Sequence record: MK308675.1
Length of the DNA stretch: 64,000 nucleotides
Strand: one strand, 5' to 3'
In this document: positions 3,712 through 58,200 of the stretch, one piece after another
Layout of the letters: each line of letters opens with the position of its first letter
Numbering within the stretch: the stretch's first letter is position 1
Made by a program: the position numbers and the translations under genes
Notes under the pieces: generated by a model
The model's database searches: none
The model's input: the letters and a program-made list of their open reading frames with translations, nothing else
Told to the model about the DNA's origin: nothing

Positions 3712-3815
3712 GTTTATACTCCAGGGTTAGAGCGCCGCTTGTTGCAGCGTTTATTGAAAAGTTTCGATGTGCCCTCTATATAAGGGCTCATCTTATTTGT
3801 CCTTTAAGGAGGGCA

Positions 3816-9233: not shown

Positions 9234-9249
9234 TTGTAATCCCTAGTTA

Positions 9250-41552: not shown

Positions 41553-43115
41553 ATGAATAATCTTCGTAAATACATAGGGCTAAAGTTAGCCCATTGGGGT
41601 AAGTTCGTGTTCCCTTACGGCGCGATGACCGCCCAAAGAACCACTGACGGAGAAGACGGCGCCGCATTTATCGACTCCGACTTAAACGCTTTAAGACTGC
41701 ATTTGGGCGGGACATATAAACAGCAAGCCTCGTTGGTTTATAATCCTGCGGCCATTGTCTCCGATACGAACGAAACCGTCCCAGGTATGCTCCGTGCGGT
41801 TGATACATCTGGCGGCCCTATTGTTGTAGACCTAGACCCGACTCTTCCTGCGGGCTCAATGGTGGGCTATATTGACGTTACGGGTACGTGGGCAACGAAT
41901 AAGTTTTCTCTAAGGGCAGCCGCGAATATCCAAGGCGAAGCCGTTAAGGAGTATACCACGGCGTTTGGGTCCATTCAGTTAATCAAGCATGCGACTGCCG
42001 GCTGGATTCCATTTGGTGGCGGAGTAGGTGGCGGAGAAGGAGGCTCGGGAATTGGCCTCCCGGAAGGGGAGCTGGTCCATGGTACGTCCTATACCTTAAA
42101 GGTAGGTGTCCCTGCGTTACTCGACTTAGGCAAGACCTTCACAACGACCGGGTTTAACGTTCACTTTGAAAGAACGATGGATTACACTGCGGCCGATTGG
42201 GAATATACGCTGCCGAACGTCACATCGCTCCACTTACCTGAAGTCTATAACGTGAAAGCCGACCCCACGCAATCCGGTGACGCTGTGGCCGACCCAGAAG
42301 CCGGCCACTGGAAACTACCTGCCGACCCTGGACGTGCTATCCTAAAGCACCCTACCTTAAAGAAATGGATGCTCGTCCGTTTGGATGTCGCTCAAGAGTT
42401 CTTCCTTCAGATTGACGAAGAAGAATACGACCACCCTGCGAGAGTACAGACATGGGCATCAGTCGATGCCGGTACGGGCGAAAGGACTATTCTGCCAAAC
42501 GCCGAAATAAAACTAACAGACCTGACTTTAACTCTGCCTTTACCACCAAGTGGCGCAGTGGGAGATACGGTCGCATTCTACGACATATGGAAACTCGCTT
42601 CATTCGCGAATGTGATTCTAGAGGTAGACGGCGCGCGGTCTTTAGACATGGACGGGAGAAGCTTTGCTATCGACGTCGATGGTGCCTCCGCCGAAATACA
42701 AGCCGTGCAACAGCGTGGCTGGGTAGCGGTCCGCTGGAACGTCGGCGCCGACCCGATGAATGACGAAGCCCCACATAGTAACTTAGTCGTAGGCAGCATA
42801 AGTCACGACTCTACTGACGACTACACGTCATCCAATGGTTCAATCGAGCCAACTACGGAAGGCAGTGACGTCAAAGTAATGAATATTACCGAAGCAACCA
42901 CAATTCAGCCCCCACTTTTGAAGTCAGGTCCTGTTACTTGGCTCACTTACAAAATCGTACAAGGCAACACAGCATACCCTGTGGAGTTTACTAGCGATTA
43001 CGTAATCGTTGATGGGGTAGAGGCCTCCAAGGCACCTAACTCAGTTACGTGGGCCAGAGTTCTGGTCTCGGGTGACGGTAAGTACGATGTGTGGTTGTCT
43101 TCACGTCCTTTATAA
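41553..43115 (+). CDS. tail fibre adaptor/anchor protein
   Basis: Two DTSGG..V.L P....G..V...D...(W/F)ATN-type domains; C-terminal domain resembles the 139-aa protein at 48842. Confidence 0.55.
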   Translation: MNNLRKYIGLKLAHWGKFVFPYGAMTAQRTTDGEDGAAFIDSDLNALRLHLGGTYKQQASLVYNPAAIVSDTNETVPGMLRAVDTSGGPIVVDLDPTLPAGSMVGYIDVTGTWATNKFSLRAAANIQGEAVKEYTTAFGSIQLIKHATAGWIPFGGGVGGGEGGSGIGLPEGELVHGTSYTLKVGVPALLDLGKTFTTTGFNVHFERTMDYTAADWEYTLPNVTSLHLPEVYNVKADPTQSGDAVADPEAGHWKLPADPGRAILKHPTLKKWMLVRLDVAQEFFLQIDEEEYDHPARVQTWASVDAGTGERTILPNAEIKLTDLTLTLPLPPSGAVGDTVAFYDIWKLASFANVILEVDGARSLDMDGRSFAIDVDGASAEIQAVQQRGWVAVRWNVGADPMNDEAPHSNLVVGSISHDSTDDYTSSNGSIEPTTEGSDVKVMNITEATTIQPPLLKSGPVTWLTYKIVQGNTAYPVEFTSDYVIVDGVEASKAPNSVTWARVLVSGDGKYDVWLSSRPL

Positions 43116-43125
43116 GGAGTAAGGA

Positions 43126-46100
43126 ATGAATCCCGAAGCCAAGCAAGTTGGCCATTTAGAGAGCGACGTTAAAGGTCGCTCTTTTGACCGATACAAAATA
43201 AAAGGCTCTCTGTCTTTAAACCCGCCTTTGGGCGGAGTGCAACCGCCTTTTCTAGCATATACGCAAAAGGATGGAAACCGCCAAATAGGCACTGTCTCAC
43301 TTTGGATACGTCGAAGAGGTGTGGCAAACAAGTCCCCCTCTACAACGGACGAGACTATATTTAGCCATCAGGCGTCATCGACTACGGCCTCTTACGGCGG
43401 AATGGGATTCGATTCCAGCGGCCATCTAGCCCACTTCATGTCTGACGGCACCGCTACGCAGTACGGCATGATAACGAAAGAGCGCTTTGTAGACTGTTCT
43501 CGCTTCTACCATATTGTGGTTCACTGGAATACATGGATATCGGATGCTAACCAACGCATGCGCATGTTCGTTGACGGCAAGGAAATCAAATCGTTCATTC
43601 ACTTTACCATGCCGCCGCTCGGCTACCAGGGGAAAGTGCATAATGCGGCTTATCCGTTTACCATCGGTCACGTTCCGGGACTGTCTGCTTATAATTACTT
43701 CGCTTTAAATGCCGAGATTGCAGACTTTGCCCTAGTTGATGGCCAGGCACTATTCCCGAAAGACTTTGGGCACTTTGATACCCAAGATAACTGGCGTCCA
43801 AGCTTCCCGAGCTTCGAAGGATGGGGACCTAACTCTCTGTTTTTGACCTGGGATAAACAGGCTAACGGAATGACCTCGCATGTCATTAATCGCCCTTCGC
43901 AATATGCCCCGGATGAGACCGACGATAAGAAGCCTATCTCTACGGTGCCTACGCCAGGTATTAAAGCCGACATCACCATACACAAGTCGTACAACCACAC
44001 GTCAAACCAACATATGTTCTTGCAGGACTCAGTCCGCGGAGACGGCTGGTTCACTACGTTCTCAGAAGCTACGATTAACTCGCGCTACCATGGTCGACCT
44101 GCGCCGGCACCCAATGGGGAAGATGAACACTTAAGGTTCAGCGGCTCCTTTAACTGGGAGAAACGTACGGATAATGAGCCGACATATTGGACACACTTCC
44201 TCTTTGCTACGGGACCCGAACACGGCATCAGTATCGTTCCTCACGATGGTACCGCCGCAGAAAAGAGAATTGAGCACGGTCTGGGGCGTAAGCCGGACTT
44301 AGCCATAAACGTGGTCCAGGAATCCGGAGCAAGCTACCCGATGTATACTTGGGCCAAAGGCTTTACGGATACTAACGACGATTCTCGCCTAAATCTCCAT
44401 AATGGCTCAGGGGTCTTTACAGCACCTGGAGCAGACCACTGGCGAAACTCCTTAACGGACGAAACCTATTTCGGATTCGGTAGTGGGAGCGCGAACAACA
44501 GCGCATCTGGTAGAAACTTCATCACGTATTTCTTTGCGTCCGTTCCCGGAAAGTCCCAGTACTTTAAATGGGAACATCGCGGGTCTAACACTAGGACGCG
44601 TTTTGAATGCGGTTTCCGCCCGCGCTTCTTCTTCTGGAAGACGGCAACGCCGTCGGGTGAGACTGCCGATGTCGGTGCTTGGGTGGTTGTTGACTGTCGA
44701 GACGGTACGGCTTGGGAATTCGACCGCACGCGCGGCGGATACTACTCTTACAGTGCGACTTACTTCAATCCGGCTGAGGTAGACGATACCGGTTTCTCAA
44801 TGGGCCACGACCTGGCCAGCATAGACGGCATTATCATGGCCTTCGCGGACGAGTCGGACCTAAACCGCTGTGCCAAGTCAATAATGAACGATAACCGTGT
44901 TCGGCCGATTAACTTCCATGGCACGGCGGACATCAGTGACGCAACTCCAGATAACCCAGGTGTAATCCTTAGCTGGAATAATGCTAACCGCTGGGCATCC
45001 GCAAACGGAGCAGCTCACCAGAGCCAGAGAGCCACGGAAGGCGGTTATCGCCTAGAGCTTTCACATACGCGTACCAATACCGCGGTAGGCTTAGGGCTTT
45101 CTCGCTCATTGCCGGAAAGCGGTAAGTGGTACTTTGAGGTAGATAGTTGCTATACGTTCGTTTTATGCGGCTACCAATTCATGGACGGTGCCCAGAACGG
45201 ATACGACTACTACGACTACGTCAAAGATACGCCGGGGTACGTATATGCTGGCGGCGTAAAGAACACACGCAGAAGTCACTACATTGCCTTGGATATGGAT
45301 GCGCGGACATTACATGTCACTACCTCCGACGGCAAGGTGTTCACTCTACCGGTTCCAGACGCCGACGAACGCACTACGGGCGATTATCAGTTCTTCGTAT
45401 CCTCTAACGTCGCGTCTAAAGATACGGCCTCCATCAACTTAGGGCAGCGCCCTTTTGTAAATGAGATGCCAGTGGGCTACCGTCCTCTGAACGACCTCGG
45501 CAACTATCAGGAAAACTCGATTGAGCCTGAGAAATACTTCGACAACTTCATTTACAATGGCCTGCAAGCTTGCCATCAGGACATGTCGTCTACGTGGGCT
45601 TACTGGGGCGTGAAGTCTTTTGAAATCGACGGCGAACTTTACCTAGCCCGCCGCCGCACGCACAGGATAGCGAACCCGCCGGTTGCCGCGGACTGGGTTA
45701 ACCAAGGACATGTGGAAATATGGCTCTGGAACAGACATACTAAGAAGTTCAACGAACATCATACCTTGGCCATGCCTTCGGGCGGATACGCAATAGATGT
45801 GAAGTCGATAGATGGAGAGACGTATCTTTCTGCGGGGTCACACTACAACGGCTCACACGACATCACTGGCGGAGCATACCTCTTTAGATGGAACCGGACA
45901 CACAAGAGATTCGAAACATTAGTTCGCCGCAATGAAGGTACCGGGCACATAGGAACCGAGATTTTCGACATCGATGAAGACCATTTGGGCTGGATAATGT
46001 CATCTCACCGCAACGGTACTGTCTTTGACTTGGATTCTCACTTCTTTAAAGTGGAGAAACAAACAGGCAATGTTGTAAAGGTCCAGGCTATCCATACGGC

Positions 46101-48831
46101 CGGGGCACACGGCGTATCGACTGAGGTCTTTGAGGGAGAAACGTGGGTCACTATTTCGGAGTATCGTACTGGCGCAAATGGAGCTCAACTTGGAAACATT
46201 CCGCAAAGAAGTTGGCGCTATGACCCGACCACCAGCGAGTTAGTGGCCGCCCCAGGTCTAACTACTGGACAGTATGCCGCAGTGGTACAGAATAAACTAT
46301 TCGCGCACTCGGGTAACTTATATTGCCTGGTTTCATCTCGTCATACGGCCAACGTTTGGACGGAGTATACTAGCCTGGGCATGTTTAAGCTAAATGCCGC
46401 TAAAGACGGCTGGGACCAAATCACCTCTATGGGCTCAATTGGCGCCAGCGAAGTAAGCGTACTGAAGAAAGATGACGGAGTTTACATCAGTGTCCCTTGT
46501 TATTACAACGGCACGTCAGTAGCATCCCGTCAGAACTACGTAGCGTTTAGCACGATTGCTTTCTTTAACCCGCAAACAGAGACGTTGATTTCCCACGAGA
46601 CGTGGCGTGGTGTGGCTCAGACAGGTGCCGACTTCTTTGAGGACGATGGTGACTTCTATTTGGCCACGACGTCTACTTTGGACGATAGCTACAGCGCGAC
46701 ATGGATGGGCGTGCAAAAGTTTGCCGATAAGAACTTATCTGGATTCATTACTCGGGCCCAGTTCGGCAGTGACTCAGTCTACGACTCTGTGCGCATTGAT
46801 GACGCCGACGGAGAGTACGTCCTGATGGTAGAACACGTGAAAGAATCTTCTCGCAGTCAAAGATTGTCAGACATTCAAATTCACGAGTACAACCCGACCA
46901 CAAAGAGTATATCGCGCATAGGCACGCGCTCATCTCACGGCTGTCATGCCTTGGACGCTAAGAAGATTGGCGGCAAGTGGTACCTCGCGTCGGTCAATCA
47001 TTCAAACGCCAGTACCGACACTACCGGCGGCGCCATTAACATTTATGTCTGGAATGAAACTACCAAAGACTTAGACTTCGTCATATCGTCACCCGTACAC
47101 GGCTGTATAGAGGCGAAGTGGTTCGAGTCCGACGGTAAGACATATGTTTCCATTACGTCTAATCGCAGCGGTTCGAACTATGGACAGCCACTGGGTACGT
47201 TCTTGTTCGACCCAGCGTCTGTAGGTAGCGAGCTCACAGTCAAACCGACTTTGTCGGGCTCAGGCCATTTCGGTCTAGACCTTTATGAGTTCAAAGGAGA
47301 AACCTTCGGCTTTATCGGCGGTTCAGCCGCGTCTTCTTCTGGCGGCTATCATACGGCCTTTATAAAGTGGTATCCTGACTCGGAGACTTGGGGCGTTCAT
47401 CAAAACCAAATCGCAGGTTCCAATATTCCGCATGGTTACGGTCGCTTCTTTGAAGCGAATGGACGACTGTATCTTCTTCTGGGCGCAGACCGCATCGGAG
47501 GCACACCAAACGCAACAACGGTTTGCCAGCTTTACCGTTACAGCGAAGCGACGCAGAGGATGTATTTCGTCAATGAGGTTCATGCTCCCGGAGCACGAAA
47601 CTTCAATGTCGTTGAATACGAGGGCGACATCTATGCGGCCATGGCTACGTGGGGTACGCCCGAGAGTAACAATCGCGGACTGGACCCGTATGACTGGACG
47701 GACAACCTCCTGCTTAAGTTTGATGCAGCAGACGAGACGTTCTACCTAGAAGCGGTTTATCCAGCGCACCATTCGGTTTGTCATAAGTTACACCTGATGA
47801 ACGACGGTAATCTGTTCATAGCGGCGCATAGCCACACGACGAACAATACCTTTAGTGCTCCTAACTTATGGCTACAAGTTAAGAAAGGTGCAGCGGCGAT
47901 GCAGCACAACACCTTGACGGTCCCGACCGACTTTGTCTGGCTCAAGTCGCTTTCTGGCCCTGCTAACTCACATAAGCAGTTCGCTAAGAAGGTAGGTTGG
48001 GAAAGGCAACTAACGTCCGACACGGCAGACGCGGCAAGCTTTACTAACGGCCAGCATATTTTCGGTGTCTACAAACACGGAGTTCGTTTAGCGTATTCGT
48101 CATCAGCAAACGTCGCGCGCCTAGCTTACTCGGTGTATGCCTGGAAAGCTGCCCCAGAGGCGGGCTTTGATTGTACAGTCCACGAAGGTAGTGGCGGCAC
48201 ACAGCATGCCCTCCCTTACGATATGGGCGACAAGCAAGCCACGCTCGGCATCATTAAGAGCATCGATGTTTCCGGCAACTGGATGGTTCAAGGACCTATC
48301 TTGAAATCTGTAAACAACCGAGTGCTTTACTTAAATGGTACCGGGGCCGCACAAGACAACTCATCCGACGGCTACATGTCTATGTTCTACAACGTAGGCC
48401 ACTACGTTCTCGGGAACCAGGATGTGTCTAACGACCACGTAAACCGCAATGGGCAGAAATACATGGGCCTATGGTTCCGTAGTATAGAAGGCCAGGTTAA
48501 AGTGGGTCGCTATTCGGGCACGGGCCAAGTCGATGGCGATTTCGTTCCGCTGTCATTTAGCGCCCGCTGGATAATGATAAAGAGTGAAGCGAGTTCCAAC
48601 AACTGGGCGGTCTATGACTTGAACAACGGAGCTAACGTTCGAAACGACGTGACGCACATCATCTATCCTAATCTCTCGCAGAGTATGGGAGAGCCGGTAA
48701 CGGATAAGATAGAAGTAAGTGCCGGCGGTTTCCGCCCTATCGGTGCCGGTAACATCCATAACCAAAACGGACAGCCTTATGTCTTCATCGCCATAGCGGA
48801 CGACCCGTTTGGTACATCTAACGCTTACTAA
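43126..48831 (+). CDS. large tail fibre / receptor-binding protein: LamG, beta-rich repeat, SPRY, 14 EAR/EPTP-like repeats, beta-rich repeat
   Basis: LamG TVSLWIRR...YHIVVHW..RMFVDG..IADFALVDG; SPRY SGKWYFEV; 14 repeats of about 55 aa at about 45580-47890; C-terminus YVFIAIADDPF. Confidence 0.75.
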   Translation: MNPEAKQVGHLESDVKGRSFDRYKIKGSLSLNPPLGGVQPPFLAYTQKDGNRQIGTVSLWIRRRGVANKSPSTTDETIFSHQASSTTASYGGMGFDSSGHLAHFMSDGTATQYGMITKERFVDCSRFYHIVVHWNTWISDANQRMRMFVDGKEIKSFIHFTMPPLGYQGKVHNAAYPFTIGHVPGLSAYNYFALNAEIADFALVDGQALFPKDFGHFDTQDNWRPSFPSFEGWGPNSLFLTWDKQANGMTSHVINRPSQYAPDETDDKKPISTVPTPGIKADITIHKSYNHTSNQHMFLQDSVRGDGWFTTFSEATINSRYHGRPAPAPNGEDEHLRFSGSFNWEKRTDNEPTYWTHFLFATGPEHGISIVPHDGTAAEKRIEHGLGRKPDLAINVVQESGASYPMYTWAKGFTDTNDDSRLNLHNGSGVFTAPGADHWRNSLTDETYFGFGSGSANNSASGRNFITYFFASVPGKSQYFKWEHRGSNTRTRFECGFRPRFFFWKTATPSGETADVGAWVVVDCRDGTAWEFDRTRGGYYSYSATYFNPAEVDDTGFSMGHDLASIDGIIMAFADESDLNRCAKSIMNDNRVRPINFHGTADISDATPDNPGVILSWNNANRWASANGAAHQSQRATEGGYRLELSHTRTNTAVGLGLSRSLPESGKWYFEVDSCYTFVLCGYQFMDGAQNGYDYYDYVKDTPGYVYAGGVKNTRRSHYIALDMDARTLHVTTSDGKVFTLPVPDADERTTGDYQFFVSSNVASKDTASINLGQRPFVNEMPVGYRPLNDLGNYQENSIEPEKYFDNFIYNGLQACHQDMSSTWAYWGVKSFEIDGELYLARRRTHRIANPPVAADWVNQGHVEIWLWNRHTKKFNEHHTLAMPSGGYAIDVKSIDGETYLSAGSHYNGSHDITGGAYLFRWNRTHKRFETLVRRNEGTGHIGTEIFDIDEDHLGWIMSSHRNGTVFDLDSHFFKVEKQTGNVVKVQAIHTAGAHGVSTEVFEGETWVTISEYRTGANGAQLGNIPQRSWRYDPTTSELVAAPGLTTGQYAAVVQNKLFAHSGNLYCLVSSRHTANVWTEYTSLGMFKLNAAKDGWDQITSMGSIGASEVSVLKKDDGVYISVPCYYNGTSVASRQNYVAFSTIAFFNPQTETLISHETWRGVAQTGADFFEDDGDFYLATTSTLDDSYSATWMGVQKFADKNLSGFITRAQFGSDSVYDSVRIDDADGEYVLMVEHVKESSRSQRLSDIQIHEYNPTTKSISRIGTRSSHGCHALDAKKIGGKWYLASVNHSNASTDTTGGAINIYVWNETTKDLDFVISSPVHGCIEAKWFESDGKTYVSITSNRSGSNYGQPLGTFLFDPASVGSELTVKPTLSGSGHFGLDLYEFKGETFGFIGGSAASSSGGYHTAFIKWYPDSETWGVHQNQIAGSNIPHGYGRFFEANGRLYLLLGADRIGGTPNATTVCQLYRYSEATQRMYFVNEVHAPGARNFNVVEYEGDIYAAMATWGTPESNNRGLDPYDWTDNLLLKFDAADETFYLEAVYPAHHSVCHKLHLMNDGNLFIAAHSHTTNNTFSAPNLWLQVKKGAAAMQHNTLTVPTDFVWLKSLSGPANSHKQFAKKVGWERQLTSDTADAASFTNGQHIFGVYKHGVRLAYSSSANVARLAYSVYAWKAAPEAGFDCTVHEGSGGTQHALPYDMGDKQATLGIIKSIDVSGNWMVQGPILKSVNNRVLYLNGTGAAQDNSSDGYMSMFYNVGHYVLGNQDVSNDHVNRNGQKYMGLWFRSIEGQVKVGRYSGTGQVDGDFVPLSFSARWIMIKSEASSNNWAVYDLNNGANVRNDVTHIIYPNLSQSMGEPVTDKIEVSAGGFRPIGAGNIHNQNGQPYVFIAIADDPFGTSNAY

Positions 48832-48841
48832 GGAGTAAGAA

Positions 48842-49261
48842 ATGCGTTCATTTTCTAAGAAATTTGGACGCGGCCCTGCCTCTCAAATCAGTAAAGGCAC
48901 CAAGAGCGCGGGTTTCCGCGCCGATGGTGCGCTCCTGGTCACAGGCAGTGTCGTAAACACCCCTATCACTTTGCCCTATGCTGCAAACGTGGAGCTATCC
49001 TTAGCAGATAGCGATACGCAGCATCTAGAACTAGCTGGCGATGTGCATATTACTGCGCCGGAGCTAAGAGTAGGTGGGTCCTGGAAAATCTATATAAGGC
49101 AAGATGCGACAGGCGGACACGATGTAACCTTCGGGGCTAACCTAAAGAACATCTATGGTACACCGGTGTTGTCTGCCGCAAACGCGACGACGTTAATGAC
49201 CCTAATCGGTCGAGGGGATGGTAATTTTGATTACACCCTAACGGCCGTTGCCACGATTTAA
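48842..49261 (+). CDS. small tail fibre anchor/adaptor protein
   Basis: GGSWKIYIRQDATGGHDVTF motif seen in phage fibre N-terminal domains. Confidence 0.6.
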   Translation: MRSFSKKFGRGPASQISKGTKSAGFRADGALLVTGSVVNTPITLPYAANVELSLADSDTQHLELAGDVHITAPELRVGGSWKIYIRQDATGGHDVTFGANLKNIYGTPVLSAANATTLMTLIGRGDGNFDYTLTAVATI

Positions 49262-49281
49262 ACTAAACAAACGAGGTTAAC

Positions 49282-52200
49282 ATGCTTCTACCAAACATTG
49301 ACGGTGGGGTTGTTAGTAAAGCAAGGGGCGATATCAATGTCGCCCCTCCTCTTTACGACCCGGAAGGCTCAATATTCCTAGATGGCCGCGACGGCGAAGG
49401 CGGCATGTTACAGTTCCGCCCGGAAACTCCATCGGACTCTACGAAATGGTGTTATTCTATCTGGATAAAGAATGGTGGGTTCAGCTACAGTGACCGGCAC
49501 TTCACGCTGCTTGGCGCTGTAAACCAGAACGGTATTCCGTCGGCACTTAACACTTCTCGGCTTGACGACAACATGGCATATATAGCCATCGACGATTCGA
49601 GCACCTTTAAGTTAAGTAATATTACGAATAACGCAACTATTGACACCTACACTCTCCCGATTAAATTTAAAGACTCGGCCGACTGGCAGCATTTGTTTGT
49701 TCGTTTTGACACCACTCGCGACATACTAGAACTGTTCGTCAATGGGGTTTTCGCAGGCGATGTCGTCGTGGCTAAAGATATCTTGAGGTTCGGCGATACT
49801 TCCCACTATCACTACATCGGAGCAGATTCGTATTCTCGTACTCGAGATGCCTATTTTACAGACCCAGCACTTATCTTCGGGGAGGGGCAGCTGGATGTTA
49901 ATGATTTTGGTTACACTGACGAACACGGCGTGTGGCGTCCGAAGGACCTAACGCAATCTTTACCGAAAAGTATTTGGAAAGGGAGCTCTTTTTACCTACA
50001 GCCGGGTAAAACGCCTAGGTTTACCGAAGAGGCCGAAGGCGGCATCGCGCATGGTCACAAATATCAACGTGGTTTCCAGAGATTCAGAGTCGGCTTTGAG
50101 CCAGACATGGTTATGGTTTTCTCTACCAAGTATGGTTTTGCCGAAGGCGCCGACTTTACCTTTAAAGAGTTGCCAGAACTCTCCATCAATGCATCAAACG
50201 AAGTGGGTGCCGTCGCGGACCCAAATGGGGTAAAATATTTCCACGATGGTTTTTCCATGGGAACTTCCGGGAACTTCCATAACGAGAACGGTTTCCCTTA
50301 CTCTTACTTGGCCTTTAAGAAAGGAGCTAAGTACGGCATCGACATCATTCATTATACGGGTGACGGCCAAGACAATCGCCGGGTCGCCCACGAGCTGGAA
50401 CAGCGCCCGCTTTCTACTTGGATTATTCCAGTCGACGTCAACGCCAACCGAACATATAACCATATCGAGTTAGGACCCAATCGCGTCATGACCCTTGAGG
50501 ATGGCGAGCTAACCGCAAGCACGGGCTACATACGTAACCTGACGGACAAAGAAGTTGTGGTCAGCAACTCAGCGAACGTCAATGCCAGCGGCGTACGCTA
50601 CGCAATGATTTGTTTTGGTAATAAACAGGGCGTTATGTCCGTGGAACATCTTGTTGGTCCCGGCAATAGTCTACATTCTGGGTCCACTGAGACGCCGATT
50701 GATTTCCACGGGCTGGTTGCATTTACTCGCCGGATGGCAGGTAGCGGTAATCGCGCACTAGACATTATTACCAACGACTCCGTGCGTTCTATTTCGAGCG
50801 CGTACGCGGTGGCCTATCCGAACAACAGTGCCAATAACCCCCAGTTCTTCAGCAGCAATCAGTTAAACTGGTTAACGACCGTCGCCGAAACAATCGGCTA
50901 TGCCGCTAGGGCAGATACGCGGTCAATCTTTAAGGCATGTAAGTCTGTAGTCAACGACGTTCAGTTAATCCCTCGTCGTATGTCGACGCATGATGCTTTG
51001 TCCGACGATAGTCCTTTCAGGAACTTAGGCGTCTGGAAAAACGCAGAGACGAATAGCACTTCGAGCTTCCACAGCGGCGGGCTTGGGGCGCACCTAGGCA
51101 ATGGCGCGACGGCACAGGCCAAATGGAGCAAGTCGATACGCGGACGCTGTTACTGGGAAGTCAACGTCGAGTCCTCAGGCAGCGGCTACTACTATTTGGT
51201 CGGCTTAACGGGCAACCCGGGCTACACTTCGGCTGCTTACATCGACTGGTCGTACTATGTCGTTTATTACGCTAATAATGGAACAATACTCAGTTCTCCT
51301 CCAGGCACTGGCGGTGAGCAATTAGGGACGACAACCGGCGGCGGTCATAGACATATTTACAGTATGTTGTGGGACCCGGAAATACGTACGCTTAAAATGT
51401 ATCGTGACGGAAGCCTTCTTTTCGAACAAGACATGAGTGCTTATGATTTACCGGACTCGATATATCCGTACATACGCCACGCCTCGGGAGCACAATCCAC
51501 AGTCTTCGCGATGAACGACGGGCGCTTCCCGTTTTTGTATCCTGAGCTTGCCGATAATGCACCTTCTCTTATGGAGGATGGCCTTAAGCCAATCGCGGAC
51601 ATAAAGAACAGCCAGGTAGCTTTTAAGCCGGTTGCGTACAAAGCGGGCGATAACTCGGGCCATCTGTTCTCTTATACTGGACAGCCGGCATCCACGACAT
51701 GTAACATGTTCGAGGCAGACGGTAAACTGTATCTCTATAAGGCCAACTTCGGTGATGGTTCGACGCACCACGTCAACGATGAGCTAATTCGCATTAATGA
51801 GGACGGCTCTTTCGAAGTAGTGCTGGAAGGGCAGTACGGCAGCGCCACCTATGACACTCGCCATTTCGAGTCCAACGGCAGACATTTCCTCATTGTCTGC
51901 GACTACAATAAGGGGGCCTGGGGGAGCGCTAACACAGGTATCGGCATAATCACTTACGAGTTTCATCCTAAGACAGAAACGCTAACGACTATCTCGGTTT
52001 TACCTAACGGTGGCGTGAACAGGCTATCGCTTTACGAGTTTAACGGTGAACTGTTCTTAGCTCGTTGTGTGTGGGGCACCTCGTATGAAAACATCCGCAT
52101 TTACAAATGGCAGCCGGACCACTTAACCTGGAAGGAAGGAGGCTACGAGGCTCTTACAAATGCCACCGCGGCACAGTTCTGGGAACGTGACGGAACACTC

Positions 52201-53649
52201 TATCTGTCTTGTGCTGCTTTGATGACGGCGGGCCGTAAGAGTGCGACGTATCGAGTCGACCCGGAAACAGGGAACCTTGCTCTCGTGTTCGCAGGGCCTA
52301 ACGTAAACCAAGCGCGCTCTTTGGCAGTCAATACGGCTAAAGACGGTAACACCTACATGTTGATGTCATACACGGGAACGAGCAACAAGCTCTTCAAGTG
52401 GGACCCTGTTAACGAGGACTGGATTGAGGATGTCGCGCCTGGGTCCTGGGCAAACTGCTACGGAATGAGCACCTTCAAAGAAGGAGAAGAGGTTTACTTC
52501 GCAATGGCGAATGCGGAATATACTTCCTCAAACGTACTGCATCACTTTGACCCGGTTACGAAGGGGCTGACTCCTATCGTTACGGCGGCTTCACAAAACG
52601 CACACGATGCTCAAAGCATTAAGTATCGCGGCGTGTGGTATACGGCATTCGCGAACCACCGCACGTCGAGCAGCTATGCCCAAGGCTACATCACTGTGGT
52701 GACCTCTAAAGTTGACCCCGACACAGGAATATTGAAAGCAGGTCGCTTCATTGAGATGCCTAAGGGCGCTGACTTAATGTGGGTTAAGGACAGAACCACA
52801 CCGGGCATTGCTCATCGTTTGTACAGTCCTAAGATGGTAGATAAGGAACTCTATCCGGGCCTAAACCTACCTGCTGGAAATTCGGCCACCGTAGACTGGC
52901 ACGATGACGGCGTGTTGTTACAAGGCGGTTATACCGGACACAATACCGGCAACATTAACCACGTGGCATACTTCTGGAAAACTGGCCCTGAGTACGGCAT
53001 TGATTTCTCTTTGCAAACCTCGGGGCCGGATGGAACAACCGCGGTGACACACGAACACAATTGCGGCGACATCCCGGAAGTTTTGATGATAAAAGGACTA
53101 ACGAATAACTCATCGTGGCATGTCAGGTTTGAGGATTTTGCGGATACCGATACCTTGCTCTTGGACACGAACACCGTAAGGTATACGTTGCCTGGCGCTA
53201 AGTATTGGGATAAGGCAAACTTCAATGAGAAGTCCGTATCGCTGTTCGCAGCGAATGCAATTGGTGTCAACCAAGGATTCGCAATGTTGGCTATTCGTTC
53301 CGTCCCGGGCTATTCAAAAACCGGTTTTTATTGGGGCAATGGCAACGCGTCGGGTATCGATTTTAACCTTGGATTTAAACCAGCATGGATGTTGGTCAAG
53401 ATTGAAAACGTCGTCGGTAACGATTGGGTAATCTTCGATTCGTCGCGTTCACCGTTTAACAAGGACGGGATGGCGAGATTGCGAGTTAACGGTACTCAGG
53501 TTGAGGACGCAGCGGAAAATAACGACATCTTCTTTACGTCAACTGGCTTTAAGTGTGACGGTACGGGAAGTTCCATGAACCGACTGAATGCTAAGTACAC
53601 ATTCATCGCGTTTGCGGAAAACCCGTTCGAACACACCAACGCTCGATAA
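49282..53649 (+). CDS. large tail fibre / receptor-binding protein: LamG, beta-rich repeat, SPRY, 7 EAR/EPTP-like repeats, beta-rich repeat
   Basis: LamG CYSIWIK..WQHLFVRFD..LFVNG; SPRY GRCYWEV..LWDPEIRTLKMYRDG; 7 repeats at about 51670-52700; C-terminus YTFIAFAENPF. Confidence 0.75.
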   Translation: MLLPNIDGGVVSKARGDINVAPPLYDPEGSIFLDGRDGEGGMLQFRPETPSDSTKWCYSIWIKNGGFSYSDRHFTLLGAVNQNGIPSALNTSRLDDNMAYIAIDDSSTFKLSNITNNATIDTYTLPIKFKDSADWQHLFVRFDTTRDILELFVNGVFAGDVVVAKDILRFGDTSHYHYIGADSYSRTRDAYFTDPALIFGEGQLDVNDFGYTDEHGVWRPKDLTQSLPKSIWKGSSFYLQPGKTPRFTEEAEGGIAHGHKYQRGFQRFRVGFEPDMVMVFSTKYGFAEGADFTFKELPELSINASNEVGAVADPNGVKYFHDGFSMGTSGNFHNENGFPYSYLAFKKGAKYGIDIIHYTGDGQDNRRVAHELEQRPLSTWIIPVDVNANRTYNHIELGPNRVMTLEDGELTASTGYIRNLTDKEVVVSNSANVNASGVRYAMICFGNKQGVMSVEHLVGPGNSLHSGSTETPIDFHGLVAFTRRMAGSGNRALDIITNDSVRSISSAYAVAYPNNSANNPQFFSSNQLNWLTTVAETIGYAARADTRSIFKACKSVVNDVQLIPRRMSTHDALSDDSPFRNLGVWKNAETNSTSSFHSGGLGAHLGNGATAQAKWSKSIRGRCYWEVNVESSGSGYYYLVGLTGNPGYTSAAYIDWSYYVVYYANNGTILSSPPGTGGEQLGTTTGGGHRHIYSMLWDPEIRTLKMYRDGSLLFEQDMSAYDLPDSIYPYIRHASGAQSTVFAMNDGRFPFLYPELADNAPSLMEDGLKPIADIKNSQVAFKPVAYKAGDNSGHLFSYTGQPASTTCNMFEADGKLYLYKANFGDGSTHHVNDELIRINEDGSFEVVLEGQYGSATYDTRHFESNGRHFLIVCDYNKGAWGSANTGIGIITYEFHPKTETLTTISVLPNGGVNRLSLYEFNGELFLARCVWGTSYENIRIYKWQPDHLTWKEGGYEALTNATAAQFWERDGTLYLSCAALMTAGRKSATYRVDPETGNLALVFAGPNVNQARSLAVNTAKDGNTYMLMSYTGTSNKLFKWDPVNEDWIEDVAPGSWANCYGMSTFKEGEEVYFAMANAEYTSSNVLHHFDPVTKGLTPIVTAASQNAHDAQSIKYRGVWYTAFANHRTSSSYAQGYITVVTSKVDPDTGILKAGRFIEMPKGADLMWVKDRTTPGIAHRLYSPKMVDKELYPGLNLPAGNSATVDWHDDGVLLQGGYTGHNTGNINHVAYFWKTGPEYGIDFSLQTSGPDGTTAVTHEHNCGDIPEVLMIKGLTNNSSWHVRFEDFADTDTLLLDTNTVRYTLPGAKYWDKANFNEKSVSLFAANAIGVNQGFAMLAIRSVPGYSKTGFYWGNGNASGIDFNLGFKPAWMLVKIENVVGNDWVIFDSSRSPFNKDGMARLRVNGTQVEDAAENNDIFFTSTGFKCDGTGSSMNRLNAKYTFIAFAENPFEHTNAR

Positions 53650-53754: not shown

Positions 53755-54744
53755 ATGTCAATCCAAACGCTATACAAATACCAGTTCGACAAGTACGGAA
53801 ATAACTCCGCTAACTTGATTCCAAATGAACCGGTGAAGTTCGATACTCCGCGTATCGTTCCTTTCGTACTGAGAGAAGGTAACTTCTATCAGAAAGACTT
53901 AACTATCCGAGATAAAGCAGACAACAGTTTATTGGTCTTAGGTACCGACTATAACCTAGTTGGCCTAGATGCTGACCTTACAGCAGAGACAGGCTTAACT
54001 GTAGCAGGCGGTATCGAGTTAGCCGATAAAACATTCATCGGTGAATTGGAAGTTACCTATCGCTGCGTAGGTGGACCGCAAGGCGAATCGCGCGCTCTTT
54101 ATCTGGAACTAATCGAAGCAATCACAAACGCAGGAACTAACCCTAGTGTTCTTTGGGAATCCATCATTGGTCGCCCTCAGCGCTTCCCGCCTGAAATCCA
54201 CTCACACTTACTGAGCGAACTGACTGAACTTGAGAAACTCTATCAGTCAATGCAGGACATGACTAATGCAATCGTCAACTCTAAGCCGATGTATGGTTCC
54301 AACCAAAACATCTTAGAACAGATTGAAGGCATCATTCAAATCCAGGCAGCGATGCAGTTAGCACTTAACCGTGTGGCTACAGGCGTAGGCTCAGTCGCGT
54401 TAATTAACCAAGTGCGTGATAATCTCGCTAACGTTCATAAGCAGTTCGATAAGACGACCAACACCGTTGGCGTTACTTGGGCAGACGTAGCAGTTATCCC
54501 TGAAGCGGACTTCAACAACGCACGCGGCGTCATCTCTATTGTTGATGCAACCGACTCCATGCAGATGGATTTCGATATTTCGTGGACTACCGCGAAAGAC
54601 CCGTCTTACACACACTATGGCCATATCGGCACAGATGAACTCATCAACGCGATGCAAGTCATTAAACAGTCAGGTAACGTTGTAGTTCAAATTCGAACCA
54701 CTAAAGACGCAACCGTCAAGACTAAATTTACTCACCTGCTTTAA
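53755..54744 (+). CDS. baseplate/tail-fibre attachment protein, paralog 3
   Basis: N-terminus YQFDKYGNNSANLIPNE...GNFY; WESIIGRPQRFPPEIHSH motif. Confidence 0.7.
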   Translation: MSIQTLYKYQFDKYGNNSANLIPNEPVKFDTPRIVPFVLREGNFYQKDLTIRDKADNSLLVLGTDYNLVGLDADLTAETGLTVAGGIELADKTFIGELEVTYRCVGGPQGESRALYLELIEAITNAGTNPSVLWESIIGRPQRFPPEIHSHLLSELTELEKLYQSMQDMTNAIVNSKPMYGSNQNILEQIEGIIQIQAAMQLALNRVATGVGSVALINQVRDNLANVHKQFDKTTNTVGVTWADVAVIPEADFNNARGVISIVDATDSMQMDFDISWTTAKDPSYTHYGHIGTDELINAMQVIKQSGNVVVQIRTTKDATVKTKFTHLL

Positions 54745-55216: not shown

Positions 55217-58200
55217 ATGAGTAGCAAATTAATCTTTACCATGCAATATTTCCGCGGGGAGAAAAAGCGCGAATATCTCGCTGACCCTGAAACCGGACTT
55301 ATTCCTGGTACTGGTGAAACGGGCGGAGGTCTAGAAGAATACGACCGCGCCAAAGCATGGGATAAAGACGACGTCGTTATTCGCGACGGCGCTATCTTCC
55401 AAGCGAACGAAGACATTCCTGCGGGCTCTTCTTTCATTGAAGGCCTTACTGGCCCGACTTGGCTTAAGTTAGGCGCAGAAGCGGTAGCGACACTTCCCGA
55501 CTACGCTGTAGGCATTCGTTATCTTAAAGACCAAGCGATTGCCCGTGGTCGAGTTATCTACCGTGCGAAGAATGACTTTACTTCTGCCGCGTGGAATCCA
55601 GCACAATGGGAAACGGTCTTCTCTGAAGACGCAGTTCGCGATAAGGTAGCGGACTTCAGTACTGCACAGTCTTACGTAACGCATGAATTAGTTGCCTACA
55701 ACGGTGACATCTATGCGGCAAACGAAGATATGGCGGCAGGGGCCTTTGACGCATCTAAATGGCAGAATCTAACTACGCCTAACGTAACATACGTCGATGA
55801 CTATGCCCCGGGCACAGTCTATACCAAAGACGCTGTAGTTATGCGCAATGGTCAATTGTTCCGTGCAACGCAACAAACTGCGACAGCATGGGATGAAGGC
55901 GATTGGCAAGCGGTTTCTTCAGTTTCTACTGTTCGTGGTTACTGGGACCTTAATGCAACCTATAAAGCAAACGAAATAGTTATCGCTAATGACCGCTTCT
56001 ATCGTGCTAACGGCGATATCGGTTCAGGCACTACGTTCACTGTAGGTACTGGTACTGAAGAATGGACTGAGGTGTCGGGCCCTGTTACTCCGCCTATCAC
56101 GGCAGATGACTTTAAAGCTTCTACGCTTTATGCTAAGAATCAGGTTATTGTAGTTAACGGCATCCTTTATCGGGCTAAGGCAGAGTTCACTTCACTCTCT
56201 GCATTTAGCATCGCGGATTGGGACCCTGTCTCTTATGACCCAGAAACGGCCGTAGACGCATGGCAAGCTAATACTGACTATAAAGCAGGGCAGTTAGCCA
56301 CGTTAGTTGTAAATGGTCGTAACACGCTTTACAGAGCGCGTGCGGACATCACAGGCGGAGCGAGTTTCGTAGCGGCCGAATGGGACGACCTAACTCAAAC
56401 GTCGACCTGGCGTGCTGAGTGGGATATCTCGAACATCTATGCTAAGGACGACGTTGTGTGGCGTGCAGGGCATCTGTACATTGCCAACGATGCGGTACCT
56501 ATCAACACTGCATGGGTAGAAGGCATCACCGGCGCTACGTGGGCTCGTTTGTTGGCCGAACCAGTATCTAAGATTTCTGTTTGGGCAGCAACAACTTCTT
56601 ATCAGAAAGATGAACTTCTAGCTTATGATGGCAACATCTATCGCGTGGAAGCCCCTTTCGTTTCTGGCGCGGCATTTACAAGCGGTGGCCTAGAACTGCT
56701 CACTGCCGGTAAGTATACTAAGATTCCTGCATTCCGTGGCTCTAACGCTTACGTCCAAGACGAGACGATTGCCGAAGGCGGAATCCTTTACCGCGCTAAA
56801 GCGGACTTTACGTCAGCTACAAACTTCAATGAAGCAGACTGGGAAGTTATCGCGGACATCGCGACAAACATCCTGTACGACTTCAGTATCACAGAAGACT
56901 ATGTAGAAAATGAAATCGTTTTCCACTTAGACTCCATCTGGCGTGCTAAAGGCGACCTTGCTCCTGGGGCTTGGGACGAGTCCGATTGGGAATTCGTTTC
57001 TGAATACTCAACCTTTAAAGGTCAGCACGTCCAGGCACGTGACTACAAGCAAGACGACGTGGTAATCCACAACAACCGATTATATCGAGCAAACTCGAAT
57101 ATTGCGGGCGGCACTGCTTTCTTGGCAGGTAGCGGAGGTAACCAATGGACTGAGGTTTCCCCTCCAGGAAATCCTTCTGCTCCGGACTGGGCAAGCTCAA
57201 CGGCATATGTTCAGCACAACTTGGTCATTCACGGTGGCGTCCTTTACCGCTGTAAGACAGACCATACTTCAGGAAGTAGCTTCCTCGCTTCTCAGTGGGA
57301 GACATTGAAAGCAGAAGCGGCTACCTTGGCTTCGACTTACCAGAATGGCCAAGAATATGTCCTTGACCAACTGATTGAATACAACGGCATTCTTTACCGC
57401 TGTATCGAAGCGATGCTAAGTTCACCTGTAACGTTCGAGCCAGACAAATGGCAAGGCGTATCGGTTTCTTATATCCGCATCTCTGCGCATAGTGCTTCAG
57501 CCGTTTATCGTGAAGGCGAATTGATTTGGCACGTGAATCGCTTGTATCGTGCTAAGGCAGGCATTAACCCAGGTCGTGCTTTCTCGCTTAACGATTGGGC
57601 TATCTCTGAAGATACCAACTACGTGAGCGAATATGCGGAGAATGAAGACTACCGCCTAGGCCAACTTATCCGTTCAGGTGTTGACTTATATATCGCAAAC
57701 GAAGCTATTACCGGTGCTCCTGCTGTACTTGACGAAACTAAGTGGAACCGCGTAGGTTACCGCCCAACCGTTCAAGGCGCGCATGACGATACTCTTGCGT
57801 ATAAGCAAGGGGACATTGTTCTTAAGGAAGGTACTTGGTACGAAGCTAACGCGGACATCGCGGCTAACGTGGCCCTGTCTGAAGGTACTACTGGCGCCAC
57901 ATGGAAACGTGTAACCGACAGCATGACCATCAAGGCACATGCGGCAGACGCAATCTTCTTCCCTGGTCAGCTCTGTCTACATGAAGAGCGCGTTTACACA
58001 GCGAAGGAATTCCTAACGGTAGACAGCTCTAATACGTTCCAGTCTATCAAGTGGGAGAAGCTAGGTTCGTTTGTTACTCTAGCGGAAGACTACCAAGACA
58101 ACATCGAATACAAGAAAGACCAAATCATCTTCCATCTGAGCGTTCTTTACCGCCGCATTGCGACGGGCACCGATACGACTTGGACGGCAGCAAATTGGCA

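What the first reader, a model, noticed from the sequence alone, without database searches (positions are those of the whole stretch)
51620..52790. A second, 7-repeat propeller is inserted at the same loop of the paralogous scaffold
Seen: in both fibres the repeats interrupt one motif: FDNFIYNG-[14 repeats]-PTDFVWLK and FKPVAYKAG-[7 repeats]-GADLMWVK, which in simple marine phage proteins I recall as contiguous (F..V.Y.G...PDLVWIK). The repeat counts are exact multiples of 7 and the two inserts are very divergent. Inference: a plug-in site where whole propellers are swapped or doubled to change specificity.
Basis: partly seen in the sequence, partly recalled or inferred. Interest (0 to 1): 0.7.

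Follow-up and report, generated by a model that had tools for sequence, protein, structure and literature searches.

The report
Propeller nested in phage fibre domain
A complete seven-bladed beta-propeller of the EPTP/EAR type is spliced into one hairpin of the end domain of a giant tail-fibre-like protein of a Vibrio jumbo phage. Related phages carry zero, one or two such propellers at exactly that spot, which looks like a natural way of bolting extra binding modules onto a fibre.

Summary
The window is Vibrio phage vB_VmeM-Yong, a 290 kb jumbo myovirus. ORF B (49282-53649) carries seven repeats of about 52 aa between FKPVAYKAG and GADLMWVK. Paralogue ORF A (43126-48831) carries fourteen between FDNFIYNG and PTDFVWLK. 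Both flanks belong to Pfam DUF7483: the left motif is its first strand and the right motif its third. In insert-free homologues the two lie 21-23 residues apart, against 383-396 with seven blades and 793-797 with fourteen. The B insert models as 28 strands in seven groups of four, and its seven best PDB matches are all the LGI1 EPTP propeller (TM 0.81). Four related phages give a copy-number table: Yong A=14, B=7; GR7B A=0, B=7; two metagenomic phages A=0, B=14. In those two, the propellers are colinear 33-35% identical tandem copies, and a duplicate of the first strand sits between them. Doubling and presence/absence at one fixed site are therefore supported. Swapping of propellers and a change of specificity are not shown. 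Distant homologues carry other passengers at this loop and at a second site. The arrangement is rare: no further case among 172 related loci. Verdict: a real nested-domain architecture and a new variant of a known kind. One procedural slip is declared in the full report.

The parts
49282..53649 (+). ORF B, 1455 aa: giant virion / tail-fibre-like protein, paralogue of ORF A
   Evidence: ORF list. Hits PHROG 19943 'virion structural protein' and 24898 'tail fiber protein'. Pfam DUF7483 at 138 bits. 100% identical in four vB_VmeM-Yong genomes, where it is annotated hypothetical.
50332..50751 (+). Partial internal copy of the DUF7483 domain in B (aa 351-490)
   Evidence: Local profile built from 8 insert-free domains matches model positions 122-262.
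51622..51648 (+). Left flank FKPVAYKAG: first beta-strand of the C-terminal DUF7483 domain of B
   Evidence: It lies 35 residues after the end of the preceding domain, as in GR7B_00155. It is positionally equivalent to the strand FFRATSYVG of the insert-free orthologue GR7B_00153, which Pfam DUF7483 covers from profile position 1. It is predicted as a strand, at low confidence (pLDDT about 55).
51649..52764 (+). Inserted EPTP/EAR-type 7-bladed beta-propeller of B (aa 790-1161). Blade-sized repeats at nt 51679-51834, 51835-52002, 52003-52149, 52150-52302, 52303-52443, 52444-52587 and 52588-52764
   Evidence: Seven repeats. The AF2 model has 28 strands in 7 groups of four, mostly pLDDT 70-94. 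The seven best Foldseek PDB hits are all the LGI1 EPTP domain (E 1e-14, TM 0.81-0.82 on the 330-residue target). The nearest sequence relatives among 1.84 billion representatives are 7-repeat Pfam EPTP proteins.
52765..53646 (+). Remainder of the C-terminal DUF7483 domain of B (aa 1162-1455), starting at GADLMWVK (third strand)
   Evidence: Pfam DUF7483 profile positions 27-330 align to aa 1163-1448. The local profile starts at model position 28.
43126..48831 (+). ORF A, 1901 aa: paralogue of B with the same architecture
   Evidence: ORF list, BLAST of A against B, Pfam and PHROG hits. It is the orthologue of GR7B_00153: 32% identity over aa 11-812, and aa 1596-1900 align directly after residue 789 of the 1089-aa GR7B protein.
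45538..45561 (+). Left flank FDNFIYNG: first strand of A's C-terminal DUF7483 domain
   Evidence: PEKYFDNFIYNGLQ aligns to model positions 1-14 of the insert-free domain profile. The score is weak, as expected for 14 residues. It lies 32 residues after the GQRPF motif, the same spacing as in GR7B_00153.
45562..46767 (+). First propeller of A (aa 813-1214, blades 1-7)
   Evidence: Repeats. Pfam EPTP hit at 38.6 bits against a cut-off of 21. AF2 strand block at fragment residues 61-414.
46768..47922 (+). Second propeller of A (aa 1215-1599, blades 8-14)
   Evidence: Repeats. It is colinear with the first propeller (28% identity over 148 aa; blade offset 7 gives the highest mean score). AF2 gives a second strand block after a low-confidence linker, but blades 8 and 14 are poorly modelled.
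47923..48828 (+). Remainder of A's C-terminal DUF7483 domain (aa 1600-1901)
   Evidence: Pfam DUF7483 profile positions 19-330 align to aa 1593-1894.
48842..49261 (+). Small ORF (139 aa) between the two fibre genes
   Evidence: Matches the C-terminal part of PHROG 4549 'tail fiber protein'. Homologous to GR7B_00154 and to the C-terminus of the 520-aa ORF 41553-43115 that precedes A.

Best explanation
ORF B, like its paralogue ORF A, is a large beads-on-a-string virion protein of the tail-fibre/baseplate module of a Vibrio jumbo myovirus. Its C-terminal DUF7483 domain is a scaffold shared by hundreds of marine phage fibre-like proteins.

A complete EPTP/EAR-type seven-bladed beta-propeller has been grafted into the first hairpin of that domain. 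It enters just after the first strand and rejoins before the second and third strands, so the host domain continues on both sides and the propeller hangs off it as a nested passenger.

Only whole propellers occur (0, 7 or 14 blades). The likely reason is that only a closed ring brings its two ends back together to fit a hairpin; this is inference.

The number changes in two ways:
- Gain or loss of the whole cassette at this one site. Recombination between the conserved flanks of paralogous or orthologous genes would explain why both paralogues use the identical point (inferred).
- Tandem duplication of a unit made of the first strand plus the propeller. This is shown by the duplicated strand motif and the colinear 33-35% identical propellers in two related phages.

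The most likely role of the propeller is an extra host-surface binding platform on the fibre. This is inferred from its position in the fibre and from the ligand-binding role of the only characterised EPTP propeller, LGI1. It is not tested.
For: Identity and context:
- The window is phage vB_VmeM-Yong.
- A baseplate assembly protein and several tail-fibre PHROG families flank A and B.

Same insertion point:
- Pfam DUF7483 starts at profile position 19 (A) and 27 (B) right after the inserts. It covers positions 1-330 without a break in the insert-free orthologue GR7B_00153.
- The first-to-third-strand distance is 21-23 aa when the site is empty, 383-396 with 7 blades and 793-797 with 14.

Fold:
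- AF2 of B aa 740-1455 gives pLDDT 74 and 7 groups of four strands.
- Foldseek top hits are LGI1 EPTP, E 1e-14, TM 0.81-0.82.
- AF2 of A aa 770-1901 gives pLDDT 63. Its best hit is again LGI1 EPTP (TM 0.73), followed by tandem-propeller proteins.

Family:
- Pfam EPTP hits A's insert at 38.6 bits.
- The nearest relatives of B's insert are 7-repeat EPTP proteins scoring 145-340 bits on PF03736.

Copy-number polymorphism:
- Yong A=14, B=7.
- GR7B A=0, B=7.
- L084 A=0, B=14.
- L095 A=0, B=14.

Tandem duplication:
- Propeller 1 versus propeller 2 scores 214 bits with 35% identity over 376 colinear residues in P0023, and 33% in P0048.
- The motifs GFGVATYKGK and GFGVTTYKGK lie between the propellers.

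The insert is an old resident: no GC or GC3 step and no flanking DNA repeats.
Against: - The first strand is modelled at low confidence (pLDDT about 55). I could not inspect coordinates, so its pairing with the DUF7483 sheet is inferred from homology and not seen.
- Pfam EPTP does not hit B's own insert directly. Membership for B rests on phmmer neighbours and on fold.
- A's model is mediocre, and two of its 14 blades are disordered in it.
- The alignment given to AF2 for A was out of register by about two blades for the 7-blade homologues.
- No evidence on virion location, oligomeric state or ligand.
- Gain versus loss in the A lineage is not resolved. The C-terminal domain tree has only 76% bootstrap support for A grouping with the other A-type genes.
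Confidence: 0.72

Rival explanations
1. There was a single ancient insertion and no hot spot. One propeller entered the ancestor of A and B before they duplicated. The shared site is simply inherited, and the empty sites in A-type genes of the other phages are later deletions.
For: All four B-type genes carry a propeller at the site. All phage propellers belong to one family, EPTP. Nothing compositional points to recent acquisition.
Against: Three A-type genes have a perfectly normal 21-22 residue hairpin and full Pfam coverage. That would need at least two exact excisions if Yong A groups with the L084/L095 A-type genes (76% bootstrap). Unrelated passengers occupy the same loop in distant homologues P0010 and L033. 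Phage propellers are no closer to each other (27-60 bits) than to cellular EPTP proteins (63-147 bits with the closest of them, P0019 and P0020; 25-140 with the other five).
Confidence: 0.25
2. The propeller is not nested but lies between two domains. The short motif before it is only a linker that resembles the first strand, so the protein is an ordinary linear array: SPRY, propeller, truncated DUF7483.
For: The left flank is modelled with low confidence. The short left pieces score weakly against the domain profile. Some distant homologues (L076_8043, L073) have a DUF7483 that starts at the third strand with no first hairpin at all.
Against: Pfam's own model includes the strand, and GR7B_00153 matches it from position 1. 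The spacing from the preceding domain to this strand is conserved whether or not a propeller follows (32-35 aa). The tandem duplication in P0023 and P0048 copied the strand together with the propeller. The strand is homologous to the opening strand of the domain's second internal sub-repeat.
Confidence: 0.12
3. The propeller is an enzyme, for example a lactonase-like hydrolase or a polysaccharide-degrading domain, carried on the fibre rather than a binding platform.
For: Weak sub-threshold Pfam hits to 'Lactonase, 7-bladed beta-propeller' (PF10282) in P0022, P0023 and P0027 and a faint one in P0048. Sialidase-type propellers appear among the lower fold hits. From general knowledge, many phage fibres and spikes carry depolymerases.
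Against: The lactonase hits are below the curated cut-off or barely around it, and they are overshadowed by EPTP at 129-340 bits. The best structural matches are all LGI1 EPTP, a non-catalytic ligand-binding propeller (PMC5906670). No catalytic family was recovered for A or B themselves.
Confidence: 0.08

Closest known systems
EPTP/EAR repeat propeller (Pfam PF03736), solved in human LGI1 (PDB 5Y2Z, 5Y31, 8Y6B, 9KZC; PMC5906670)
   Same: Seven repeats of about 45-55 aa form a 7-bladed, four-stranded propeller. The B insert superposes on it at TM 0.81-0.82 and A at 0.73. Pfam EPTP hits A's insert above the cut-off.
   Different: Sequence identity is only about 10% to LGI1. The phage copies are highly divergent even from metagenomic EPTP proteins (22-33% identity over the matched stretches). 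Here the propeller is nested inside another domain of a phage structural protein, not C-terminal to an LRR domain of a secreted animal protein. The ligand is unknown.
DUF7483 (PF24299) fibre-like proteins of pelagiphages, cyanophages, roseophages and uncultured marine phages
   Same: A and B end in this domain (138-151 bits). They share the upstream LamG/SPRY-type modules seen in relatives. Records annotate relatives as tail fiber or virion structural protein.
   Different: In 117 sampled domains the first hairpin is uninterrupted. A and B carry 372 and 787 extra residues there. No paper in the searched library mentions DUF7483.
'Evolved' Dit and other tail proteins of lactococcal and streptococcal siphophages with carbohydrate-binding modules inserted in loops (PMC6669499, PMC10688798, PMC7533335)
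   Same: The principle is the same: a conserved structural tail-protein domain carries an optional binding module spliced into a loop, present in some phages and absent in close relatives.
   Different: The host domain, passenger fold and phage type all differ: Gram-positive siphophages against a Gram-negative jumbo myovirus. No sequence or fold relation was found. Here the passenger is a propeller whose copy number varies (0/7/14) in two paralogues.
Stand-alone 'EAR-like protein' (ORF 199, IPR009039) annotated in the related jumbo Vibrio phage vB_VhaM_pir03 (PMC7765460, table of ORFs)
   Same: It shows that EAR/EPTP repeats have already been flagged by InterPro in a jumbo Vibrio phage.
   Different: That ORF is a separate protein of about 548 aa with no stated link to a fibre domain. 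I did not compare sequences because pir03 did not appear among my hits.
Beta-propeller modules in other phage receptor-binding proteins (own knowledge: the five-bladed platform of staphylococcal phage phi11 Gp45, the six-bladed sialidase of K1F endosialidase; Kelch-like and other propeller proteins of jumbo phages appear)
   Same: Propellers are used as host-recognition or enzymatic modules on phage tails.
   Different: Those are in-line domains of trimeric proteins with different blade families. None is known to me as a nested, copy-number-variable EPTP insert.

Membership tests
EPTP/EAR propeller (PF03736) | Pfam EPTP profile hit above the curated cut-off (21 bits) | tested here: inconclusive
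   A's insert scores 38.6 bits, so the feature is met for A. B's insert gives no EPTP hit even at E<=10. The orthologue GR7B_00155 has PF03736 precomputed. P0023 scores 129 bits.
EPTP/EAR propeller (PF03736) | Nearest sequence relatives are bona fide EPTP proteins | tested here: met
   phmmer of B's insert against 1.84 billion representatives gave 25 hits. Nine of the ten scanned are EPTP proteins at 129-340 bits: eight cellular-type, mostly with 7 repeats, and the phage fibre P0023. The tenth (P0028) is a PKD-domain protein with no EPTP hit.
EPTP/EAR propeller (PF03736) | Seven tandem repeats of about 45-55 aa per propeller | tested here: met
   B has 7 and A has 14 (2x7). Cross-profile detection scores 33-38 bits against at most 7.2 in shuffles.
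EPTP/EAR propeller (PF03736) | Seven-bladed four-stranded propeller fold superposable on LGI1 EPTP | tested here: met
   The B model has 28 strands in 7 groups. Foldseek ranks 1-7 are all LGI1, with TM 0.81-0.82 and rmsd 3.7-4.2 over about 365 columns. For A the TM is 0.73, at lower model confidence.
EPTP/EAR propeller (PF03736) | Binds a ligand on one face of the ring, as LGI1 binds ADAM22 | not testable with these tools
   No ligand information. This is inference only.
DUF7483 (PF24299) | Pfam hit above the curated cut-off (27 bits) | tested here: met
   A scores 151.5 bits and B 138.2 bits, with two stretches each.
DUF7483 (PF24299) | Uninterrupted coverage of the profile from its first strand | tested here: not met
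   The C-terminal match starts at profile position 19 (A) and 27 (B). The first strand lies 787 and 372 residues upstream. The feature is met in the orthologue GR7B_00153, which covers positions 1-330. This is the insertion itself and not evidence against homology.
Phage tail fibre / receptor-binding protein | Homology to families annotated as tail fibre or virion structural protein | tested here: met
   PHROG 19943 (E 1e-43 to 1e-49) and PHROG 24898 'tail fiber protein' (E 1e-24 to 1e-31). These are annotation-level labels only.
Phage tail fibre / receptor-binding protein | Encoded in the tail/baseplate gene module | tested here: met
   The same-strand block 39612-60075 contains PHROG tail and tail-fibre families. 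A baseplate assembly protein lies at 32702-33784. The order is syntenic in GR7B, L084 and L095.
Phage tail fibre / receptor-binding protein | Present in the virion and contacts the host receptor | not testable with these tools
   No proteomic or structural data on these phages were found.
Loop-inserted binding modules of tail proteins ('evolved Dit' type) | The host domain is a Dit/galectin-like domain and the passenger is a CBM | tested here: not met
   No Dit or CBM family was recovered for A or B in Pfam or PHROGs. The resemblance is in principle only.

The most novel reading that the evidence does not exclude
The first hairpin of DUF7483, together with a second site after its first sub-repeat, may be a general docking loop that marine phages use to mount interchangeable surface-binding modules on an otherwise conserved fibre tip. 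The modules seen include EPTP propellers in one or two copies, roughly 150-aa beta modules and even whole LamG-SPRY arrays. Cassettes would move between paralogues and phages by recombination in the conserved flanks. If true, DUF7483 proteins would be a natural modular display scaffold. The quantised insert sizes would then be a readable record of host-range evolution in uncultured marine phages.
Probability: 0.3. Interest if true: 0.7.

Novelty: new variant of a known kind. Interest (0 to 1): 0.55.

Why it matters
DUF7483 proteins are among the commonest large structural proteins of marine phages: at least 554 loci matched a single peptide pattern in IMG/VR. Neither the domain nor these two genes has any literature, and all the genes are annotated hypothetical. 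The finding gives the domain a first piece of anatomy: where it tolerates passengers. It also documents a clean natural series, with 0, 1 or 2 propellers at one residue-precise site in two paralogues across four phages, showing how a fibre gains and multiplies a binding module. Finally, it places the animal-centred EPTP/EAR propeller on a phage particle. It does not reveal a new principle, because optional binding modules spliced into loops of tail proteins are already known from dairy siphophages.

Tried and rejected
- The word-indexed protein search with B's propeller alone found nothing. The exhaustive search was needed.
- PDB sequence searches with both inserts and with DUF7483, as single sequence and as profile, gave only chance-level hits.
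- Two alignments were too diverse for locus scans.
- The GTDB genome scan with the cellular EPTP protein P0019 found no confirmed relative, so the organisms that encode the nearest cellular EPTP proteins remain unknown. Cluster look-up gave only metagenomic sources.
- Pfam gave no family for the non-propeller passengers at site 1 (P0010, L033) or site 2 (P0005, P0009). For the L009 module it gave only weak CopC and CBM_4_9 hints.
- A search for DNA-level repeats or a GC step at the junctions, as a sign of recent transfer, found none. One 19-nt match is out of frame and was judged chance.
- A test for faster divergence of propellers than scaffold, as a signature of swapping or diversifying selection, gave no clear outlier.
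- The blade-by-blade register of A against B gave no decisive signal.
- The alignment for the AF2 run of A put the 7-blade homologues about two blades out of register. I ran it anyway, and this may have lowered the model quality.
- I considered and rejected a single 14-bladed ring for A, because its model superposes on a 330-residue 7-bladed propeller at TM 0.73.
- Slips, also declared in the full report: one search printed a consensus line via hmmemit, and notebook entries 1 and 3 hold consensus-like motif shorthand (entry 1 three short motifs, entry 3 one: 'FDGNTGT'). None of it was used for anything, and nothing was deleted.

Full report
**1. What the window is**

The region is 100% identical to four isolates of Vibrio phage vB_VmeM-Yong, a myovirus of about 290 kb that infects Vibrio mediterranei. 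Both large genes are annotated 'hypothetical protein' there.

They lie in a same-strand block (39612-60075) of tail and tail-fibre-type genes. A baseplate assembly protein is encoded at 32702-33784.

**2. Check of the observation**

ORF B runs 49282-53649 (1455 aa) and ORF A runs 43126-48831 (1901 aa). All four quoted motifs are at the stated places:
- FKPVAYKAG is B aa 781-789, nt 51622-51648.
- GADLMWVK is B aa 1162-1169, nt 52765-52788.
- FDNFIYNG is A aa 805-812.
- PTDFVWLK is A aa 1600-1607.

Between the motifs, B has 7 repeats and A has 14. Profiles built from one protein's repeats detect the other's:
- The profile from A's repeats finds 7 of 7 sites in B, at 33.4 bits against at most 7.2 in 200 shuffles.
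- The profile from B's repeats finds 13 of 14 sites in A, at 38.2 bits against at most 3.8.

Nothing else in the window carries either feature.

**3. What the flanks are**

Both proteins end in Pfam DUF7483 (PF24299). The match begins at profile position 19 in A and 27 in B, immediately after the repeats.

The syntenic relative, Vibrio phage GR7B, supplies the control. Its gene 00153 (1089 aa) is the orthologue of A:
- A aa 11-812 aligns to residues 15-781 of 00153 at 32% identity.
- A aa 1596-1900 aligns directly onward from residue 790.
- Pfam covers its DUF7483 from position 1 to 330 without a break.

In that protein the sequence reads FFRATSYVGDGVDGREITTGVDADLIWVK.

The distance from first to third strand falls into three classes:
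- 21-23 residues in eight insert-free proteins.
- 383 and 396 residues in the two proteins with seven repeats.
- 793-797 residues in the three proteins with fourteen.

The spacing from the end of the preceding domain to the first strand is the same (32-35 aa) with or without an insert.

**4. What the insert is**

Evidence from sequence:
- Pfam EPTP (PF03736) hits A's insert at 38.6 bits against a cut-off of 21. It does not hit B's insert directly.
- An exhaustive phmmer search of B's 372-residue insert against 1.84 billion representatives found only 25 relatives.
- Nine of the ten scanned are EPTP proteins scoring 129-340 bits on PF03736, mostly with exactly seven repeats; the tenth is a PKD-domain protein without an EPTP hit.

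Evidence from fold:
- AlphaFold2 of B aa 740-1455, with a 16-row alignment, gave mean pLDDT 74. It shows 28 strands in seven groups of four across the insert.
- The seven best Foldseek hits in the PDB are all the EPTP propeller of human LGI1 (E 1e-14, TM 0.81-0.82 on the 330-residue domain) (structure paper PMC5906670).
- The model of A aa 770-1901 is weaker, with mean pLDDT 63. It shows two strand-rich blocks separated by a low-confidence linker, and two blades are poorly modelled.
- Its best hit is again LGI1 EPTP (TM 0.73). Proteins built from tandem 7-bladed propellers follow.

B therefore contains one discrete EPTP-type 7-bladed ring. A most probably contains two.

**5. Relatives: a copy-number series**

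The searches recovered two more related phage contigs from Logan assemblies, L084 and L095. Both keep the gene order A-type then B-type.

| Phage | Blades in A-type gene | Blades in B-type gene |
|---|---|---|
| Yong (this window) | 14 | 7 |
| GR7B | 0 | 7 |
| L084 | 0 | 14 |
| L095 | 0 | 14 |

In every propeller-bearing gene the local DUF7483 profile starts at model position 23-28. In every empty gene it starts at position 1.

In the two 14-blade B-type proteins (P0023 and P0048), the two propellers are colinear and 33-35% identical, at 214 bits. The linker between them repeats the first-strand motif as GFGVATYKGK and GFGVTTYKGK. That is the footprint of a tandem duplication of a unit made of the first strand plus the propeller.

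A's two propellers are also colinear but older: 28% identity over 148 aa, with blade offset 7 scoring highest.

**6. Gain, loss or swap?**

- A's C-terminal domain groups with the other A-type genes at 76% bootstrap. Yong A is therefore an A-type scaffold on both sides of its propellers.
- One gain in the Yong lineage is more parsimonious than repeated exact excisions, but this is not settled.
- The phage propellers are as far from each other (27-60 bits) as from cellular EPTP proteins.
- There is no GC or GC3 step and no junction repeat.
- Region-by-region identity shows no clear excess divergence of propellers. L084 against L095 gives N-terminal part 57%, propeller 1 69%, propeller 2 60% and C-terminal domain 80%. 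Yong B against GR7B B gives 28%, 22% and 34% for N-terminal part, propeller and C-terminal domain.
- I found no case of one propeller replaced by another.

**7. Is the site special?**

The sample was 172 related loci from IMG/VR and JGI metagenomes. Among the DUF7483 domains in them that could be assessed:
- 117 were contiguous.
- 7 had an insert of about 105-220 aa at a second site, after the first internal sub-repeat.
- 8 started at the third strand or later.

Of those eight:
- L033 carries an unclassified passenger of about 170 aa in the same first hairpin. P0010, from the protein search, does too.
- Four (L017, L039, L040, L031) keep the first hairpin far upstream of the rest of the domain: at the protein's N-terminus in L017, L039 and L040, and at about residue 495 in L031. 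A LamG-SPRY array of about 470-560 aa lies between it and the third strand. The hairpin assignment rests on short, modest matches.
- Two (L076_8043, L073) lack the hairpin, and in the eighth (L066) only the later part of the domain is present.

None of the 172 loci has EPTP blades apart from GR7B, L084 and L095.

The loop is thus one of two recurrent insertion points in this domain. The propeller cassette is confined, as far as sampled, to one small clade of Vibrio-type jumbo phages.

**8. Mechanism: what is shown and what is inferred**

Shown:
- The nested position.
- The whole-propeller unit.
- The 0/7/14 polymorphism in both paralogues.
- Tandem duplication that includes the flanking strand.

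Inferred:
- Only closed rings fit a hairpin, because their ends meet.
- The cassette moved between paralogues or phages by recombination in the conserved flanks.
- The ring is an added host-surface binding platform.

Untested:
- Virion location.
- Oligomeric state.
- Ligand.

**9. Comparison with what is known**

- The closest principle is the optional carbohydrate-binding module spliced into loops of Dit and other tail proteins of dairy siphophages (PMC6669499, PMC10688798, PMC7533335). Host domain, passenger and phage type all differ, and no homology was found.
- EAR/EPTP repeats have been flagged once in a related jumbo Vibrio phage, as a stand-alone ORF (pir03 ORF 199, PMC7765460).
- No paper mentions DUF7483, or EPTP together with phage tail fibres.
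- I rate this a new variant of a known kind.

**10. Declaration of slips**

- In one search my script ran 'hmmemit -c' on a profile of eight insert-free DUF7483 domains.
- I noticed at once and recorded it. I used the line for nothing, deleted nothing and did not repeat it.
- Consensus lines were printed by the alignment tool itself and were not used.

Noticed in passing
window 52765-53646 and 47923-48828; relatives P0004-P0018: DUF7483 looks like three tandem sub-repeats of about 100 aa. Each opens with a strand of the type seen in FKPVAYKAG. The left-flank pieces of GR7B_00155 and P0023 align best to the opening strand of the second sub-repeat (model positions 120-134).
   Followed up: partly
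L009 6912-8384, L015 6545-7945, L076 2-1807, L081 5589-8417, L099, L132, L145; P0005, P0007, P0009: There is a second recurrent insertion point in DUF7483, after the first sub-repeat. Seven of the sampled domains carry 105-220 aa there. P0007 and P0008 carry about 750 aa there, with LamG/pentraxin-type domains. A module of about 120 aa containing HYHSGMGG or NHSGMGG recurs there and in the N-terminal parts of L017 and L039.
   Followed up: partly
P0010 aa 794-962, L033 ORF aa 824-997, P0005 aa 1348-1659, P0009 aa 1011-1176: An unclassified module of about 150 aa occurs as a passenger at site 1 and at site 2, and repeatedly in the N-terminal stalks of the same proteins. It ends in sequences such as VVNGKTLVD, VKIDGKILVD and VEVNGKILVD. 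It has no Pfam family.
   Followed up: partly
L017 5634-8369, L039 5219-7891, L040 5733-8360, L031 4419-8378: In these fibre proteins the first hairpin of DUF7483 (for example EHFFPIIYEGNGAGQRV) lies far upstream of the rest of the domain: at the protein's N-terminus in three of them, at about residue 495 in L031. The domain resumes about 470-560 residues later, after LamG- and SPRY-type regions. Either a whole array is nested in the loop, or the upstream hairpin folds back onto the C-terminal domain.
   Followed up: partly
window 41553-43115 and 48842-49261: Each giant fibre gene is preceded by an ORF ending in the same segment of about 80 aa (C-terminal part of PHROG 4549 'tail fiber protein'). 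These are a 520-aa ORF before A and a 139-aa ORF before B. GR7B has the same pair (00152 and 00154), whereas L084 and L095 lack the small one.
   Followed up: partly
window 55217-59551: A third giant gene (1444 aa, PHROG 9851 'tail fiber protein') visibly consists of many repeats of about 65-75 aa. Examples are ...YRAKADFTS...W... and ...YRANGDIG.... It is unrelated to EPTP or DUF7483.
   Followed up: no
window 39612-40610, 40621-41547, 53755-54744: Three ORFs of about 310-330 aa share an N-terminal region (PHROG 2163/13857, tail or virion protein) and bracket the fibre genes. L084 has a homologue downstream of its B-type gene, 39% identical to the ORF at 53755.
   Followed up: no
L001 (GR7B) 3646-6915 and 7379-11752: The C-terminal domains of the two GR7B paralogues are each other's nearest neighbours (distance 0.61, 76% bootstrap). 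This suggests homogenisation between paralogues within that genome.
   Followed up: no
P0003 (1860 aa, metagenomic): Another DUF7483 protein has a different-looking repeat region upstream of its first DUF7483 copy. Its units resemble ...NKIVIAYSDGSNNYGK... and ...DKVVISYNDGGDNSYGK.... This may be a different propeller placed in line rather than nested.
   Followed up: no
window 43126-53649 versus the rest of the window: The two fibre genes have higher GC (0.49-0.52; GC3 0.55-0.60) than the window average (0.469) and than the neighbouring fibre genes (GC3 0.47-0.48).
   Followed up: no
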